This document shows positions 1 through 6,125 of a stretch of DNA of 64,000 bases, in pieces (within the stretch, counting starts at the first letter, position 1; every line of letters starts with the position of its first letter). A program made the position numbers and the translations under genes. Below the pieces are notes generated by a model that saw only the letters and a list, made by a program, of their open reading frames with translations, ran no database searches and was not told the origin of the DNA. The stretch lies in the NCBI GenBank assembly GCA_963924565.1, contig OZ004610.1:29636001-29700000 (forward strand). Direction: 5' to 3'. This DNA comes from Ascidiella aspersa. Lineage: Eukaryota.

Positions 1-829
1 GTAGGTGCCACGATTTTGTGGTCGTTTCCTTTTGTTTCCCCGCTTAGCTCAACCCCCTGGGTGGCCGTTGCTTAGTTTGCACAGGGAAGGCATTAAACCC
101 GATCGCCCGTTTAACGCCGTTCGCTTTATTTGCCGTGGACTTAACGTTTATTTGCCAATCAGAGGCCGTACAGTAAACTGGCCCTAAAATCTAAGCCGTG
201 TTTTGTACACACACACATTGTCTAGGCCGGATCTGTTGGCTAATTCCCATCAGCGGCCGGCCCACTTTTCAAGCCTACTTTGCATACCTTCTTTGGGAGG
301 GGGCGGAGCAGTAACAAATTAACAGTGTTGTCTTCAAACTTGTTCTCATAGGCTTAACGCGATGGGCGGTAATTAAGGTGGACACGACAGTCTATTGTGC
401 TTTGTGGCCGTGTTTTAACCGGACCCAACAACGCACAAACCTACTAGAATAACATAAAGCTGCGGCAAGACATTACGGGACGCATCTGCTCGATAATATA
501 TTTAACCCTCAGACCGCGAGAGGCTTTCAACTAATTCCCTCGGGACTTTGCTTTGTACGTAGATCGATTCCCCCGAAACCTATAACGCTTGTAGAGAAGG
601 CGTGCAATGATTAATATTTAAAGGGCGCTCTTGATGGCCTGTTATTGCGTTGTTTTGAATTGCATCAAGCAACATTTGTTTTCGTTTGTTGTCTTTAAAA
701 CCCTAAAAAAAGCGCCCATATGGCGACCCTGTTGCGTATCGGTAATCGTGATTAAACATATCCAACGTACCATAAAAAATGATTAACACACGCATGCAAT
801 AAAAGACAACACACAAAATGTCATACAAC

Positions 830-886
830 CCGGGCGGCGGAGTCGGTTAAAAATAACCCGAGTCCGACTCCGACACCGCAGCCCTG
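830..886. mobile_element. Collapsed MITE relic with GGAGTC/GACTCC subterminal repeats
   Basis: Imperfect inverted termini ccgggcggcggagtcgg ... ccgactccgacaccgcagccctg. Confidence 0.45.
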
Positions 887-1551
887 CACACAAGCATGCT
901 TTTTACGTTTTATTCATTTTAATATTGAATTTTATATGAACAGAGGCCGCTTGGATCCTGTTTATATTCATTTTGATTTTTACGATTTTTATTTAAAGTT
1001 AAACAATAGCATCCGGTATCCCATTTTCTTTTCATTTTTAGCCTATTTTTACGGTTGTGATTTAACAGTGACGCGAACAGATGAAAAATAGGGAAAATGA
1101 GGTTACCTTAAAATTGGCCACAATGTGGTCTTGCAAATGGCCTTGATGTTTATAAAAAGGTATCCAATGACGTCTATCGAATTCCCCTAGGGCCACACTG
1201 GAGTCTAATTACGGTAAAAGTGATGTGGTTCCTTGTTTTCAAACGGCAAGGGCATTTTGCCGCTTTCCAAATATACACACAGCACTCAACACTCGTCCCA
1301 AGGCCACCGGTAATTATAAACACTCCGTCCCTTGTGGGATTTTTGTTATTTAATATGCTATGAATGGTATACGAGCGTTGATGATAGACCCGCAAAAGCA
1401 TGAAGCGTAATGACAAAATGTGCTAAAAAAGCTGAGATGATTTAATCCACTAAAAGCATTGTATCGTTCATTGTTTAAATTAAAACCGCGTGGGTATTTT
1501 TAAATTGATTCAGTAATATCTGAGCGATCAAGGTGATGTTTTGATGGCCTT

Positions 1552-1982
1552 TAGGGATGTCCGATAAAATGGGATTGGAGCCGATAACGAAGGTAAAGGA
1601 AAGTATCGGTACTCCTACGATACGAGAAAAAAGATTGAAGCTTATACCTTAAGTCCTCGTTCGATTTCTATGTCGGTATAGTCGTTAATTTTTTGGTATC
1701 GATGCCCAAATTTATTAAAGTATTTTAGCCATGGTTTGCGATCTTACTGAGCATTTTACACTTACGGGAGTCGTTTTTTTAGAAGATAGCGTATTAACAA
1801 TAAAAGTAACTCGGTTTCAAAGCAATAACGCGGGGCTTATAACCCGGAAACACATTTGCGCATTTAAGAAAACATTTTGCTTTATTTGACTTTAACAATG
1901 ACGTCATTTTAAATAGAATCGGCGGCACTTTACGCCTACATTATCGGGATCGGAATAGAATATGTGGTCTCGGACACCCCTA
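1552..1982. mobile_element. hAT-like MITE (TAGGGATG termini)
   Basis: TIRs TAGGGATGTCCGA / TCGGACACCCCTA, internal CCGAT/ATCGG repeats, and 8-bp flanks atggcctt / ttggactt (6/8 match). Confidence 0.6.
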
Positions 1983-2778
1983 TTGGACTTGCAACGAATC
2001 TCGAAACTGCAATGCGGTTAGACATGATTGCACTGCTATATGAGACGTAAAAGCAATGTTTTTGCGACCAGGGCCACTCAGTAGCCCACAGCCACATAAA
2101 GAGAAGCAGTAGCAGCATCAGCCATGATGATTTTACCTGGAAGGAGCCCATGTAGCGTCGGCGCCCTGGCAGTGCCCAGCGATCGCGCTGCTCCCAAAAG
2201 CGAACGTTCTGCGGTCGGTTTCAAGTAGGAGAAGGTCGATTAAAAAGGTTGTACAAATAAGACAGGCAACTCGTTAATTAGTTTTAATTAATCAGTAGAC
2301 AAACACGCCACCACTCTTTGGCGACGACGCACGCGCAAGCATGCTGGGAAAACGAGCTGAGTCGGCTTTCCAGTAATTTTTTTCGTTGTCAACACTTGAC
2401 ACTTGACCTCTCGTCGTTTATGCTGCAATGTCGGGCATGCGTCTGCCCTGTTTGCAGACTATAGTTGCACGCAAATAACATGTTTGAAGTGTTTTTTGGT
2501 TGTTTGTTATTTGCACCTTGTGTTTGGCAGTGTGGTTCTTAAGCAAATAGGAACGCATAACACGAAAAAGCTTCTCTCTTTATTTAAAGTTGGACTTTGC
2601 TAGTTTTAATATTTTGAACTGAAACCTATTATATTTCATTTGTATCTATGTCTGTTAATTCTGTCTGTCTGTTTGCTTTATATAACTATACCCTATTAAA
2701 TGTGATCTGTCACTATCCCTGTCAATTTATCTCAAAGCTTATCCAGAGTAATCCAGGTAAATTTTTCTTACAAACTTT

Positions 2779-2784
2779 TTTATT
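2779..2784 (-). terminator. Candidate polyadenylation signal AATAAA for the prohormone mRNA
   Basis: AATAAA on the minus strand ~670 nt after the stop codon; another lies at 2579-2584. The sequence does not show which is used. Confidence 0.3.
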
Positions 2785-3451
2785 TTGCTTTTGTTTTTTC
2801 GTGCCTTGCGCGTTTAAATAGTACAAAAAAGCGGCGGAATGCAAGTGGAAAAAATAGACGCTCTATTAAATTATGTTTCGGCGGGCGAATGAGCAGTATA
2901 GTTGCATATTGCGCGCCGCTAGTGGCCGAAACGACGCCGGGAATAATAAGAATCGTAGCAATAATAATAAGGGCTGTGGAATATCACAAACGTAATACCA
3001 ACAAACAGCAGATACAAGCAAGAACAGACGGTGGAATAATAAATACATGACGTAGCGAAACACAGTAGTGCGCGAATGGGACATGGTTGACAATGTAGGA
3101 AAAAAATAAATAGGAAATACGTTAGAATATTCTTATCTACACACACACACTCACACGCATACAAGTTTTCACCGGGCGATTTGCAAAGCGCCGGTTTAAA
3201 CACACGCACACACCTGGATATATGTGGATGTATATATATTTATATGGAATAAGGTGTAGAAAAGGTTGGTCACAGTTAACGGCGAACTTCGGCGGCAGTT
3301 TTTTTTTTCGACATTTTTTTCGTCGAGTTTGTTTTTATCGAGTCGGGAAACTCTCCTTTCCCGAATTTTTTCTCTCTCGCTCTCTCTACGGCCCCTTGGC
3401 GCCACGAACTCTCTCGTCTGGCCTTATACTGGGGTCGGATTGCTCTTTTGT

Positions 3452-3622
3452 TTACTCCTTAGCGGCGAGGCGGTCTCTCTTTTTCGCCATTTTCTTCAAG
3501 ATCTTTGCTTTCTTTTTCTCAGCAGCATTCGCAAGAATCTTCGCAAGCCTTTTCTGGATTTCAACATGCCCTGTTGAATAAACGCTCAAGGTTTGGGTTG
3601 GGTCTCGCGCTTTTTTGCCTAG
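3452..3622 (-). CDS. Prohormone terminal coding exon: amidation signal GKK and a second basic helical peptide
   Basis: Acceptor aaatatatag (3623-3624, weak pyrimidine tract) keeps phase 0 and gives LGKK-ARDPTQTLSVYSTGHVEIQKRLAKILANAAEKKKAKILKKMA-KKR-DRLAAKE*, stop 3452-3454. An alternative acceptor at 3571-3573 gives a different frame. Confidence 0.6.
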   Translation of the reverse strand, partial: LGKKARDPTQTLSVYSTGHVEIQKRLAKILANAAEKKKAKILKKMAKKRDRLAAKE

Positions 3623-5297
3623 CTATATATTTGTGTGTGTTCTTTACCAACGGCGCTTTATTTTTTATTTAAAACGAGTTTAACCAAAAAACTTGAAAAA
3701 AAAATGTTTTTAGGTTTTATCTTACTTTTTATATTAGAGCTTTTTGTTAAATTGCTCATAAAATTTACTTTACAGAAAAATACTATTTAAAAAAAGTCAC
3801 ATTTATTATAGAAAATGAGTGGTCACTCATATGAAACTTCGATTTTGAACTCGGCATCGTTTGTCGATGAATGTCATTGATTTTCGTGTGTTTTTTTTAC
3901 CCCAAAGAGACCTTCGTACCATTAATGTTTTTTACCCAAAAATTTGTTTTGAAAAAAATGTATGAAAACGCGCAGTGATTTTATGCGATGAATGGCTGTC
4001 ATTGTGCGGCGGTATACGAGGTGTGACGAGCGGTGGGCGATTTACAATGTTACACAGGCGCCATTGTCAGTCGGCAAAACGATTCGTTACGGGAACGTAT
4101 TTGTCGACCGCGTGTTTATTTTCGTTTATGCGATGGGCCGTAAGCGGCTCAGCGGGGGAATTCCCTAACTAGGTAGGCGCGACGAGACCCGGTTTTGAAC
4201 GGTGAGCGTTTATTCAACTTTTTTTTACAGGTACAACTTTTTTAAGCTAAGACTCGAAATCACCTCCAAGCTGTTTTTGGTTAGTCACAGTAACTGGTGC
4301 TAACGGCTACCGGTAAATAGTAAGATAGAGAGAAGCTTTTTCGCCCTGCAGTGACGACACAATTGGCTTTCTGTCCAATAAATTGTGCTTCTTACGTCAC
4401 GCGCGTGCGTTCGTGTTTTTTCGTGCAAGAATATCAATGCGCACAACGGTACGCGACAAGTGTTACACACTGTTATTATATAGTTAAACGGTTGTCAGTG
4501 TCCAGATATACCGTGCGTCGGTATATTTGGGAATTGTGTGTGCGCGTTGCTATATTGCGTTGTCGCAAAATAAACACACACTCAAAGTGGTGGGTTGTTA
4601 CTTTAAAAGTGTTATGACACACATAACACAATCGATGCGAGTTCGCGATCGAAGTTGCAAAGTTTTCACTTTGCATTTTGTTCAAGGGGTGTGACCACAT
4701 AAGCATAAAGCATACAAGTAACTCTAAATAGTGTGTGGGTGATGGGGCTTACCTTGACGGCGTAGGAGTCCGAGTTCAAGTCGGAAACGAGTCCGTTAAT
4801 GATCAGCATACGCTGTAGATCCTGGTGGTGGCGGGCCAGGGCTGAGTTGAGTGAAATCTCGGCGTGTCGCTTGCGAGCGTTGGTTCTGCGAAACGAGAAA
4901 GAAATTGAGGTTATTGGTGAGGACTCGTTGTCGATTCGCTTATACGATAAACTTATAATCGTTGTCCATTCGCGGAAGATCGCGCAATTCTAGCCCCCGG
5001 GAAAAGTCGCGAGCAGACGCCGCGGCTCCGTCCCCGAAACCGCCGTTATGACGTAACCGTAAGCAGGACGAGCTGACACGGTGCCGCCCCAGAACAATCG
5101 CGCCAGTGTTACGTCACAGTTAAAAGCGCGATAGTTTTACTGGTTGCTTACCTGGTGTGCGTTAGCCGGCTGATGATGTTCGGGTGCATTACCGAATCGT
5201 CGTTGTTTTGTGACGTAGGGCGCGCGTAACAAGCGACCGCCGCGTACACGACAACAAGGGCGAGTGAACGAATGATGATGCTCTTTGTGGATTGCAT
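3452..5297 (-). CDS. PTH/PTHrP-like peptide hormone precursor; spliced CDS join(5152..5297,4753..4885,3452..3622), 149 aa
   Basis: Manual splicing with GT-AG sites and consistent phases gives MQSTKSIIIRSLALVVVYAAVACYARPTSQNNDDSVMHPNIISRLTHTRTNARKR-HAEISLNSALARHHQDLQRMLIINGLVSDLNSDSYAVKL-GKK-ARDPTQTLSVYSTGHVEIQKRLAKILANAAEKKKAKILKKMA-KKR-DRLAAKE*. It has a signal peptide and basic cleavage sites, and aligns without gaps to PTHrP/PTH 1-34. The last-exon acceptor is the least certain part. Confidence 0.8.
4753..4885 (-). CDS. Prohormone coding exon 2: RKR site and PTH/PTHrP-like mature peptide
   Basis: Pyrimidine-rich acceptor tttctttctcgtttcgcag (4886-4888) and donor GTAAGC (4752). 133 nt open in the phase required by the upstream exon; encodes TNARKR-HAEISLNSALARHHQDLQRMLIINGLVSDLNSDSYAVK. 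Confidence 0.88.
5152..5297 (-). CDS. Prohormone coding exon 1: signal peptide and pro-region
   Basis: ATG at 5297 lies 3 nt after the acceptor cttttta-cag (5301-5303). Hydrophobic core LALVVVYAAVACYA. Donor GTAAGC at 5151. 146 nt, ends in phase 2. Confidence 0.85.
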
Positions 5298-5728
5298 TTT
5301 CTGTAAAAAGAATCAGTTTAAATTAAAAATACCGGACAAAATAGTTTAACATATAGGCTCTTCACAATTAAAATTGCGATTTTTTTTATTGAAACGCTTA
5401 AGTTCAGAAAGGGTTTAAATTTCCCTTTGCTCGTAAATCGTATTTTAATCCACTTTCACGGATCGGAGTCGGCGTTGCTTTGATGCGGGCCGATGCTTTA
5501 CCGTCGGGGCCGAGAGGCCATCGCCCGGCCACAATATTTACGGCTTTGATTCGTTTGAATTTCGACCGAAGGTAAATAAATAGTGGCCGGGGTTGACGGC
5601 GGACGAGGGAAATTAATCGCCGCTCGTTAAGTTCTTTTCTCGGTATATAGAGATCCGCAAGTATAGCGATGGGTTGGATCGCTTTTGCAAAAACTATAAG
5701 TTTTGTCGATGCATTTACGAATACTTAC

Positions 5729-6125
5729 GTTTTTTGCGATGGGTCTTTGGGTTCTTCTTTTTTCCTTTCTTTATTAGTCTTTGCGAAGTTGTGTCAGTTT
5801 TTCAGCAAGTTTTATTCGCTTATATATATAGTCGCTTTTATTTTCTGAAAAGGCAAAGCAAAACTTCGTTGGAGTGCATTGCAATAAAGACAATTGCTCG
5901 ATATTTCACACACTTGAAAACTGGTTTCCAAATGCTAAACTGCCCTCTTGCTATAAAAGCACAATAATTTCAAGCTGAGTTAAGCGCACTCTGTAAGTGC
6001 GAAATTTCGCGGAGTTTTGCAACTCACAATCCCGTCTCGCTGCATCGAATATTCCGGGTGCAGTAATCACCTTTTAAACTCCAATCGCTTTACGAGCCCT
6101 ACTCGGTGTCTCGCTGCTCCGGCTC
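5729..6125 (-). other. Putative non-coding first exon (5' UTR) of the prohormone gene
   Basis: Consensus donor GTAAGT at 5728-5723 and a TATA box about 30 nt upstream of ~6125. The 5' end is estimated from TATA spacing. SL trans-splicing at 5301 is an alternative explanation. Confidence 0.5.

What the first reader, a model, noticed from the sequence alone, without database searches (positions are those of the whole stretch)
4753..4875. Hidden PTH/PTHrP-family hormone missed by ORF calling
Seen: after RKR comes HAEISLNSALARHHQDLQRMLIINGLVSDLN. Offset by one residue, it aligns without gaps to PTHrP [32 protein letters not shown] (E4, L7, Q16-D17-L18, R20, hydrophobics at 22-24, 27-28 and 31). 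It also aligns to PTH [32 protein letters not shown] (E4-I5, L7, L11, H14, R20, D30). The predicted amidated peptide is 39 aa. Known: E4, L7, R20 and the C-terminal hydrophobic face are PTH1R-binding determinants. PTH-like precursors have been predicted in invertebrate chordates but are poorly characterised. Inference: a boneless-chordate member of the PTH family.
Basis: partly seen in the sequence, partly recalled or inferred. Interest (0 to 1): 0.8.

Follow-up and report, generated by a model that had tools for sequence, protein, structure and literature searches.

The report
Sea-squirt helical peptide-hormone precursor gene
The flagged stretch is part of a real, transcribed and spliced gene for a small secreted hormone-like peptide, but sequence alone cannot show that it is a parathyroid-hormone relative rather than a glucagon/secretin-type or a lineage-specific peptide.

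Summary
On the minus strand, RKR (4875-4867) is followed by HAEISLNS... RNA contigs show a spliced gene: 5'UTR exon 5844-5729, signal-peptide exon 5300-5152, peptide exon 4885-4753, then two alternative 3' exons. Exon 3570.. (about 74% by contig depth) adds a very basic 24-residue tail without an amidation site. Exon 2208-2137 (about 26%) adds ...WALP-GRRR, which predicts a 52-residue Pro-amide.

PTH membership is not shown. There was no Pfam or PDB match at E<=10. The Parathyroid model found nothing in the genome. The only hits among 1.84 billion proteins were ankyrin repeats, and no orthologue was found. The matches are not enriched at PTH/PTHrP-invariant positions, and they need a one-residue offset. 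The un-offset N-terminus (His-Ala-Glu directly after the cleavage site) fits glucagon/secretin-type ligands equally well.

The genome encodes a PTHR-like, a secretin/glucagon-receptor-like, a calcitonin-receptor-like and a CRF-receptor-like receptor. My best reading is a peptide hormone, probably a class-B1 receptor ligand of unresolved subfamily. Receptor assays are needed to decide.

The parts
5729..5844 (-). 5' untranslated exon (116 nt). It has no ATG and two in-frame stops. An AG acceptor lies just upstream, and 28 further contig bases do not lie on window 1-6000.
   Evidence: Joint 5300|5729 (skips 428, GT..AG) in X2 contig 11 (depth 423.5) and in 2 X6 reads. Sequence and frame.
5152..5300 (-). 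Coding exon 1. ATG at 5297 (AAAATGC). It encodes MQSTKSIIIRSLALVVVYAAVACYA|RPTSQ... The signal peptide is about 25 residues (5297-5223), cleavage site by reading only, followed by the start of the pro-region. The exon ends in phase 2 (..ACC AG|GTAAGC).
   Evidence: Joint 4885|5152.
4753..4885 (-). Coding exon 2: end of the pro-region (R)TNA, the RKR cleavage site (4875-4867) and the 38-residue peptide core HAEISL...SYAVK (4866-4753). The donor is AAG|GTAAGC, phase 0.
   Evidence: AlphaFold2 single-sequence model: one helix, residues 2-36, mean pLDDT 89.6.
2869..3570 (-). Alternative terminal exon 3A (major form). Coding part 3570-3496 reads GMLKSRKGLRRFLRMLLRKRKQRS-stop (net charge +11). The rest is 3'UTR.
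   Evidence: Joint 3570|4753 (skips 1182, GT..AG) at depth 313.7. X2 contig 9 spans 2869-3572 at depth 353.8. Charge.
2137..2208 (-). Alternative exon 3B (minor form), 72 nt: NVRFWEQRDRWALP-G-RRR-YMGSFQ. The amidation/cleavage signal GRRR lies at 2166-2155. The donor is CAG|GTAAAA. The following exon(s) were not found.
   Evidence: Joint 2208|4753 (skips 2544, GT..AG) at depth 108.8. The bin 2001-2200 depth of 35.9 fits about 72 nt at about 100x. Sequence.

Best explanation
This is a real minus-strand gene of at least five exons that encodes a small secreted prepropeptide.

Shown:
- It is transcribed, with canonical splicing.
- The first ATG opens a frame with a hydrophobic signal sequence.
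- An RKR site precedes a 38-residue core that folds in silico as one long helix.
- Two alternative 3' exons give different C-termini.

Inferred:
- A prohormone convertase cuts after RKR and frees an N-terminus that starts His-Ala-Glu.
- The minor isoform is cut at GRRR and amidated to a 52-residue Pro-amide.
- The major isoform keeps or sheds a +11 basic tail.
- The peptide acts as a hormone or neuropeptide on one of the animal's class-B1 (secretin-type) GPCRs. Its free N-terminus with the acidic residue would enter the transmembrane pocket, and the hydrophobic stretch at residues 20-30 would bind the extracellular domain.

Whether the receptor is the PTHR-like one (contig C2) or the secretin/glucagon-receptor-like one (contig C8) cannot be decided from sequence. 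The peptide should not be filed as a PTH-family member.
For: Gene model: spliced RNA contigs and reads support it. The depths of the two alternative 3' joints (313.7 + 108.8 = 422.5) add up to the depth of the shared exon contig (423.5). X6 reads over the gene lie almost only with the first mate on +, as expected for a minus-strand RNA in a stranded library. All four introns are GT..AG with polypyrimidine tracts, and the UTR exon has no upstream ATG.

Precursor anatomy: signal peptide, RKR and GRRR.

Structure: a single helix over residues 2-36, pLDDT 89.6.

Copy number: single copy in the genome.

Candidate receptors: TM3 exons give best PDB matches of PTH1R/PTH2R 75.7/75.0 bits against 58.1 for the next family, SCTR/GLP1R/GCGR 47.6-44.9, CALCR 61.2 and CRF receptors 52.1.

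Literature (passages read):
- Ciona has 2 PTHR-like and 3 GLPR-like receptors (PMC2396169).
- No secretin-superfamily ligand has been found in tunicates (PMC7251081).
- The acidic residue near the ligand N-terminus (Glu4 of PTH, Asp6 of TIP39) contacts a conserved Arg2.60b (PMC8364112).
Against: - No sequence method links the peptide to any class-B ligand family: Pfam at E<=10, PDB at E<=10, and six-frame genome searches with the Parathyroid, Hormone_2, CRF and calcitonin models, none of which hit this locus.
- The only hits at E<=0.001 among 1.84 billion representatives are 5 ankyrin-repeat proteins at 31-38% identity. This shows that unrelated helical sequence matches the peptide better than PTH does.
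- No orthologue was found, so conservation is untested.
- The helical hydrophobic moment of residues 13-32 is low, 0.09-0.12.
- The two 3' joints rest on one contig each, with only 27-28 nt on the shorter side, at a 90% likeness setting.
- Tissue of expression is unknown.
- The strongly cationic tail of the major isoform would also fit a host-defence peptide.
Confidence: 0.5

Rival explanations
1. The peptide is the tunicate orthologue of PTH/PTHrP/TIP39 and the agonist of the PTHR-like receptor.
For:
- A PTHR-like receptor gene exists in this genome.
- The gene layout, with a non-coding first exon, a signal/pro exon, and an exon carrying the end of the pro-region plus the hormone, resembles the three-exon pth gene. 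PTHrP genes also have 3' splice variants (PMC4354418, passages).
- PTH-like peptides were predicted in tunicates by Mirabeau & Joly 2013, as cited in PMC4354418 and PMC5640766.
- Real family members can be very dissimilar: TIP39 shares two identical residues with PTH and PTHrP (PMC8364112), and insect iPTH is <12% identical (PMC7224569).
Against: - The Parathyroid HMM gives no match and no PDB PTH, PTHrP or TIP39 chain is hit at E<=10.
- Only 3 of 11 PTH/PTHrP-shared positions are kept, which is no enrichment over the 23% overall identity.
- The MHD/MHN motif is absent.
- The alignment needs a one-residue offset, so the activating residue 1 would be missing.
- Position 23 is Ile, not the large aromatic residue that contacts the ECD (PMC8364112).
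- P = 0.002-0.018 before multiple-testing correction.
- An earlier PTH-like claim in this same genome (s1-801602) was judged to be chance.
Confidence: 0.2
2. The peptide is a divergent glucagon/secretin/VIP-type ligand that acts on the secretin/glucagon-receptor-like GPCR on contig C8.
For: - The mature N-terminus is His-Ala-Glu directly after the cleavage site, with no offset. This matches the H-[AS]-[DEQ] start of that superfamily, with Ser8, a basic residue at 12, hydrophobic pairs at 22-23 and 26-27 and a G-L-V at 25-27. The motifs are recalled from memory and not tool-tested.
- The peptide has its own exon.
- A C-terminal Gly-basic amidation signal is present in isoform B.
- A receptor of that type is present, and tunicate ligands for it are unknown (PMC7251081, PMC2396169).
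Against: - The Hormone_2 HMM does not match the exon, and none of its 5 weak genome hits is at this locus.
- The family's Gly4, Phe6 and Thr7 are Ile, Leu and Asn here.
- There is no BLASTP similarity to the better Hormone_2 candidate L002.
- No PDB GLP-1, glucagon, secretin, VIP or PACAP chain is hit.
Confidence: 0.2
3. It is a lineage-specific secreted peptide unrelated to class-B ligands. One example: a host-defence or cell-penetrating peptide whose active part is the +11 cationic tail of the major isoform, with the HAE.. helix as a neutral pro-piece. Another: a novel neuropeptide for a non-class-B receptor.
For: - There is no homologue of any kind among 1.84 billion representatives or in the word-indexed collection.
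- The tail has net charge +11 and a helical moment of 0.39, while the core has net charge -1.
- The major isoform (about 74%) carries the tail and has no amidation site.
- The contig depth in X2 is high.
Against: - RKR frees the HAE.. helix as an N-terminus.
- The minor isoform replaces the tail with a classical amidation signal, which is typical of hormones.
- The confident single-helix model of about 35 residues matches the length class of class-B ligands.
Confidence: 0.3
4. It is a CRF/urocortin/DH44-type ligand (the I-S-L-N start resembles the [IL]-S-[IL]-D motif) that acts on the CRF-receptor-like GPCR on C3.
For: - The residues E-I-S-L-N near the N-terminus (motif recalled from memory).
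- A CRF-receptor-like gene is present.
Against: - The CRF HMM gives no match.
- The similarity ends after 4 residues.
- Neither isoform yields an amidated peptide of about 40 residues.
- The coding region is split by introns, whereas by my recollection vertebrate CRF-family genes carry it on a single exon.
Confidence: 0.05

Closest known systems
PTH / PTHrP / TIP39 family (Pfam PF01279 Parathyroid), ligands of PTH1R/PTH2R
   Same: - A secreted prepro-hormone with the dibasic site directly before a helical receptor-binding region of about 34 residues.
- An acidic residue and a Leu near the N-terminus, an Arg at the position equivalent to 20, and a hydrophobic face behind it.
- A non-coding first exon, with the intron shortly before the pro-cleavage site.
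- 3' splice variants, as in PTHrP.
- A basic C-terminal region in the major isoform.
   Different: - No HMM match.
- A one-residue offset is needed.
- V2, S3, Q6, H9, G12 and the MHD motif are lacking.
- Ile replaces the aromatic residue at position 23.
- One isoform is amidated, and vertebrate PTH peptides are not.
Glucagon/secretin/VIP/PACAP/GHRH superfamily (Pfam PF00123 Hormone_2)
   Same: - A His-Ala-Glu start directly after the cleavage site.
- The peptide is encoded on its own exon.
- Long helix.
- Hydrophobic pairs near positions 22-23 and 26-27.
- Optional C-terminal amidation or basic extension.
   Different: - No HMM match.
- Gly4, Phe6 and Thr7 are replaced by Ile, Leu and Asn.
- There is a single peptide per precursor as far as is known.
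- The 52-62 residue products are longer than usual.
Insect iPTH (PXXXamide), the proven ligand of insect PTHR (PMC7224569)
   Same: - Signal peptide, a dibasic site, a mature peptide ending in an amidation signal plus basic residues, and then a C-terminal extension.
- It shows that a PTHR ligand need not resemble vertebrate PTH.
   Different: - The sequence was not compared here, because none was held as a stored protein.
- The C-terminus here is ...ALP-amide, not P-x-x-x-amide.

Membership tests
PTH/PTHrP/TIP39 (PF01279) | Match to the Parathyroid profile HMM | tested here: not met
   hmmscan of the exon-2 peptide against Pfam at E<=10 gave only ANAPC16 at E 0.18. A six-frame search of the whole genome with PF01279 gave 0 matches and 0 first-look candidates. 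Caveat: the controls rang nowhere, and the CRF and calcitonin models also find nothing in this genome although matching receptors exist. These models may be blind to tunicate ligands.
PTH/PTHrP/TIP39 (PF01279) | Conserved N-terminal activation sequence starting at residue 1 after the dibasic site, including the M-H-D/N motif at 8-10 (PMC4354418) | tested here: not met
Read directly. The peptide starts H-A-E-I-S-L-N-S-A. Only E and L coincide, and only with a one-residue offset.
PTH/PTHrP/TIP39 (PF01279) | Arg20 and a hydrophobic ECD-binding face, with a large hydrophobic residue at 23 (PMC8364112) | tested here: inconclusive
   With the offset, Arg falls at position 20 and L/I/I at 22-24, L/V at 27-28 and L at 31. 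Position 23 is Ile, not Trp or Phe. The pattern is shared with other class-B ligands.
PTH/PTHrP/TIP39 (PF01279) | [quoted passage not shown] | tested here: inconclusive
   A UTR exon, a signal exon and a hormone exon are present, but the hormone exon is followed by further alternative coding exons.
PTH/PTHrP/TIP39 (PF01279) | Activates a PTH receptor | not testable with these tools
   A PTHR-like receptor gene exists at G000:C2:34.68-34.70 Mb. No assay or co-folding tool was available.
PTH/PTHrP/TIP39 (PF01279) | Orthologues or conserved synteny linking it to vertebrate PTH loci | tested here: inconclusive
   No orthologue was found. ORF scans of 40 kb on one flank, 20 kb on the other and the rest of the window show only a RING-H2-like and a BTB-like exon. 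These were read by eye and not run against Pfam, so there is nothing diagnostic.
Glucagon/secretin superfamily (PF00123) | Match to the Hormone_2 profile HMM | tested here: not met
   No hit at E<=10. None of the 5 weak genome hits among 10 scored candidates is at this locus.
Glucagon/secretin superfamily (PF00123) | Mature peptide begins H/Y-[AS]-[DEQ] directly after the processing site (motif recalled) | tested here: met
   RKR|H-A-E. This is only three residues, so it carries little weight by itself.
Glucagon/secretin superfamily (PF00123) | Gly4, Phe6, Thr7 (motif recalled) | tested here: not met
   The residues are Ile4, Leu6 and Asn7.
CRF/urocortin/DH44 (PF00473) | Match to the CRF profile HMM, and an amidated peptide of about 38-46 residues | tested here: not met
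   No hit. The products are a 52-residue amide or a 62-residue non-amidated peptide.
Generic bioactive-peptide precursor | Signal peptide, basic processing sites, optional Gly-basic amidation signal, expression as spliced mRNA | tested here: met
   The signal peptide was judged by reading only, because no SignalP tool was available.

The most novel reading that the evidence does not exclude
The peptide is the long-missing endogenous agonist of a tunicate class-B1 receptor. The most interesting case is the PTHR-like receptor. It would then be an intermediate-looking ligand that carries a glucagon-type His-Ala-Glu start on a PTH/PTHrP-like mid-region (Q-D-L-x-R plus a hydrophobic face). Alternative 3' splicing would switch it between an amidated 52-mer and a form with a PTHrP-like basic tail. 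That would tie the PTH and glucagon/secretin ligand families together in the sister group of vertebrates.
Probability: 0.2. Interest if true: 0.75.

Novelty: new member of a known kind. Interest (0 to 1): 0.45.

Why it matters
[quoted passage not shown] They have PTHR-like and glucagon-receptor-like GPCRs. Searches in tunicate genomes and transcriptomes have failed to find a PACAP/secretin-type ligand (PMC7251081), and the PTH-like peptides predicted in tunicates are reported to share only low similarity with vertebrate PTH (PMC4354418).

This gene is expressed and single-copy, and I found it in no public protein collection that I could search. It is a concrete candidate to test on those receptors. 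A positive pairing would date a bone- and metabolism-hormone axis to before the origin of bone. A negative result would add one more orphan ascidian peptide.

Tried and rejected
**Searches that led nowhere**
- phmmer of the 38-residue core against PDB chains: 0 hits at E<=10.
- phmmer of exon 2 (44 aa) against 1.84 billion representatives: 5 hits at E<=0.001, all ankyrin-repeat proteins. I rejected these as compositional, because the exon is spliced behind a signal peptide and models as one helix.
- The word-indexed search found no candidate. It sees only proteins of about 24-77 aa for this query.
- The ESM Atlas gave only bacterial hypothetical proteins at 0.91-0.92, which is uninformative.
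- Pfam on four exon pieces gave only sub-threshold ANAPC16 and VitD-bind_III.
- Genome-wide searches with the Parathyroid, CRF and calcitonin models gave nothing. The Hormone_2 model gave 5 weak hits elsewhere.
- BLASTP against the best Hormone_2 candidate (L002) gave no alignment at E<=100. I therefore dropped the idea that the two genes are paralogues.
- A synteny look by ORF scans of flanking loci and the window gave nothing diagnostic.
- A tRNA scan of 1-6000 found none.

**Gene model**
- My acceptor scan listed the 2208 exon, which the reads then confirmed. I found the 3570 acceptor by reading.
- The exon(s) after 2137 were not found.

**Literature**
- Mirabeau & Joly 2013 is not held, and On et al. 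2015 was not found.
- I did not open supplementary files. Mirabeau & Joly's supplement may contain the predicted tunicate PTH-like sequence, and that could settle whether this is the same gene.

- I did not compare the peptide by script with PTH, PTHrP, secretin or GLP-1 sequences. None was held as a stored protein, and sequences from memory or from the finding text are not to be typed. The identity counts were therefore made by eye.
- The spliced protein was never joined. All searches were made exon by exon, and the joined step was left out.
Full report
**What is in the sequence.** The finding lies on the minus strand. Translating 4899-4753 gives FSFRRTNARKRHAEISLNSALARHHQDLQRMLIINGLVSDLNSDSYAVK. 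RKR is at 4875-4867 and the peptide begins at 4866. Upstream, 5297-5148 reads MQSTKSIIIRSLALVVVYAAVACYARPTSQNNDDSVMHPNIISRLTHTR. By reading, this is a basic n-region, a hydrophobic core and a small-residue C-Y-A site, so a signal peptide of about 25 residues. No SignalP tool was available. Bacterial-style ORF listing catches only a fragment (4666-4809, starting at an internal Met and running into the intron) and the exon-1 ORF, which fits the description 'missed by ORF calling'.

**Gene model from RNA.** The look-up of sequencing runs gave 6 runs, and I laid four of them on window 1-6000.
- Run X2 (Logan contigs, kind not on record) carries spliced contigs at high depth and intronic contigs at low depth, so it behaves as RNA.
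- Its contig 11 (426 nt, depth 423.5, no mismatches) joins 5844-5729, 5300-5152 and 4885-4753. The introns are 428 and 266 nt, both GT..AG.
- Exon 2 is then joined to 3570 (skips 1182, depth 313.7) or to 2208 (skips 2544, depth 108.8). The two depths sum to 422.5, which matches the shared exon.
- Contig 9 (2869-3572, depth 353.8) is the terminal exon of the major form.
- The raw-read RNA run X6, from another study of the same species label, shows the two 5' joints with 2 reads each. Its reads over the gene lie almost only with the first mate on +, as expected for a minus-strand transcript.
- Caveats: each 3' joint rests on one contig with 27-28 nt on the shorter side, at 90% likeness. Only about 6% of X6 was read.
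- Splice sites, phases and the absence of any ATG in the UTR exon were checked.
- The exon1/exon2 split codon is AG|A = Arg, so the pro-region ends ...THT-R-TNA-RKR.

**Products.**
- Major isoform: HAEISL...SYAVK followed by GMLKSRKGLRRFLRMLLRKRKQRS-stop. This is 62 residues after RKR, the tail has net charge +11, and there is no Gly-dibasic amidation site.
- Minor isoform...SYAVK followed by NVRFWEQRDRWALP-GRRR-YMGSFQ|GT. This predicts a 52-residue Pro-amide. Its downstream exon(s) were not found.
- AlphaFold2 without an alignment models the 38-residue core as one helix (residues 2-36, mean pLDDT 89.6).
- The gene is single-copy in the 308.6-Mb assembly.

I counted 7 of 31 for each of the two strings printed in the finding. 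They are not statistically persuasive.
- For one fixed alignment, P(>=7/31) is 0.002-0.018, before correcting for the chosen offset and the choice among hormone families.
That is 27%, no more than the overall 23%.
- The M-H-D/N motif (PMC4354418, passages) is absent.
- The offset means the mature peptide would lack residue 1.
- Position 23 is Ile rather than the large aromatic residue that contacts the ECD (PMC8364112, passages).

Tool tests were all negative.
- Pfam at E<=10 gave no Parathyroid, Hormone_2 or CRF hit.
- PDB phmmer gave 0 hits at E<=10.
- The Parathyroid model found nothing anywhere in the genome.
- phmmer against 1.84 billion representatives gave 5 hits at E<=0.001, all ankyrin-repeat proteins at 31-38% identity. 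This is a useful control: unrelated helical repeats match better than PTH does.
- The word-indexed search found nothing.
- The ESM Atlas was uninformative.

These negatives have limited weight.
- The CRF and calcitonin models also find nothing in this genome, although CRF-receptor-like and calcitonin-receptor-like genes are present.
- TIP39 shares only two identical residues with PTH and PTHrP (PMC8364112).
- The proven insect PTHR ligand is <12% identical to vertebrate PTH (PMC7224569).

Sequence therefore cannot settle membership either way.

**An equally good alternative.** Without any offset, the mature N-terminus is His-Ala-Glu directly after the cleavage site. This is the H-[AS]-[DEQ] start of glucagon/secretin-type ligands. 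Ser8, a basic residue at 12, hydrophobic pairs at 22-23 and 26-27 and G-L-V at 25-27 also fit. These motifs are recalled from memory and were not tool-tested.
- The acidic residue near the N-terminus contacts the same conserved Arg2.60b in PTH receptors, and the paper calls it highly conserved in glucagon-like peptides (PMC8364112).
- Against this reading, Gly4, Phe6 and Thr7 are Ile, Leu and Asn here.
- The Hormone_2 model does not match.
- Its best genome hit is elsewhere: L002, reading ..PR/HSEAILTNEYS.., 17.9 bits, below the cut-off. It shows no BLASTP similarity to this peptide.

**Receptors.** The HRM model gave 7 matches out of 33 scored candidates.
- By my reading, five of them have the class-B1 Cys/Trp pattern.
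- Each of those five lies within 25 kb of 7tm_2 exons on the same strand.
- Best PDB matches of their TM3 exons:

| Locus | Best PDB match (bits) | Next or other match (bits) |
|---|---|---|
| C2:34.69 Mb | PTH1R/PTH2R 75.7/75.0 | SCTR 58.1 |
| C8:20.51 Mb | SCTR 47.6, GLP1R 47.5, GCGR 44.9 | PTH1R 34.1 |
| C3:22.80 Mb | CALCR 61.2 | CGRP type 1 receptor 55.7 |
| C3:20.38 Mb | CRF2R 52.1 | CRF1R 50.3 |
| C3:21.09 Mb | none at E<=1e-11 | - |

- This mirrors the published Ciona set of 2 PTHR-like, 3 GLPR-like, 2 CRHR-like and 1 CALCR-like receptors (PMC2396169, passages).
- Searches in tunicates have failed to find a PACAP/secretin-family ligand (PMC7251081, passages).
- PTH-like peptides were predicted in tunicates by Mirabeau & Joly 2013. 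I know this only through citing reviews (PMC4354418, PMC5640766). The original paper is not held, and I did not open its supplement.

**Verdict.** The gene is real and hormone-like. The most likely mechanism is as follows. A convertase cuts after RKR. The helical peptide then acts on a class-B1 GPCR, with its free N-terminus carrying the acidic residue in the transmembrane pocket and its hydrophobic residues 20-30 on the extracellular domain. Alternative 3' exons switch between an amidated 52-mer and a basic-tailed 62-mer. The splicing and the anatomy are shown. Processing, amidation and receptor use are inferred.

My probabilities are about 0.5 for a class-B1 ligand, 0.3 for a lineage-specific or host-defence peptide and 0.05 for a CRF-like ligand. 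The class-B1 figure includes PTH-type and glucagon/secretin-type at about 0.2 each.

That the animal is a sea squirt comes from earlier scan notes. It fits the receptor set, but I did not test it. All searches were made exon by exon, and the spliced protein was not joined or searched as a whole.

Noticed in passing
window 2137-2208 and 2869-3570 (minus strand): Alternative 3' exons give the same hormone core two different C-termini, in a ratio of about 3:1 by contig depth in run X2. One is a +11 basic tail and the other carries a Pro-Gly-Arg-Arg-Arg amidation signal. The exon(s) after 2137 are not identified.
   Followed up: partly
window 5844-5846 and upstream: The 5'UTR exon starts right after an AG acceptor, and the RNA contig carries 28 further 5' bases that do not lie on window 1-6000. 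This points to either a further upstream exon or a trans-spliced leader.
   Followed up: no
window 827-872 (also about 1540-1586): A short palindromic element (CGGAGTCGG...CCGAGTCCGACTCCG) has very high depth and many loose ends in both RNA and other runs, with bin depths up to about 2159 in X2. It is probably a dispersed hairpin/MITE-like repeat.
   Followed up: no
G000:C2:34677798-34702654 (loci L007, L019, L048): A PTHR-like class-B1 receptor gene. Its TM3 exon scores 75.7 bits to human PTH1R, against 58.1 bits to the next family.
   Followed up: partly
G000:C8:20497274-20516311 (L009, L044); C3:22803133-22806421 (L010, L041, L049); C3:20370915-20378350 (L011, L046); C3:21093939-21100669 (L012, L045): Four more class-B1 receptor genes: one secretin/glucagon-receptor-like, one calcitonin-receptor-like, one CRF-receptor-like and one with no PDB match at E<=1e-11.
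   Followed up: partly
L002:1501-1563 (G000:C5:2431774-2431836, minus): The best genome hit of the Hormone_2 model (17.9 bits, below the cut-off) reads HSEAILTNEYSTHNSMQVVKEL directly after a possible acceptor. It has no similarity to the peptide studied here.
   Followed up: partly
whole genome G000: The Pfam CRF and calcitonin models find nothing in six frames although matching receptors are present. Tunicate class-B ligands seem to lie below Pfam detection, which weakens all HMM negatives here.
   Followed up: partly
window 4753-4866 (minus strand): The hormone core resembles the ankyrin-repeat consensus (31-38% identity to repeats in 5 proteins). I judged this a chance or compositional match.
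   Followed up: yes
window 6400-53600; L050-L055: The gene sits in a gene-poor region. ORF scans show no convincing long exons for tens of kb. The exceptions are a RING-H2-like exon (L051:633-920) and a BTB-like exon (L052:6772-7053), both judged by eye only and not run against Pfam.
   Followed up: partly
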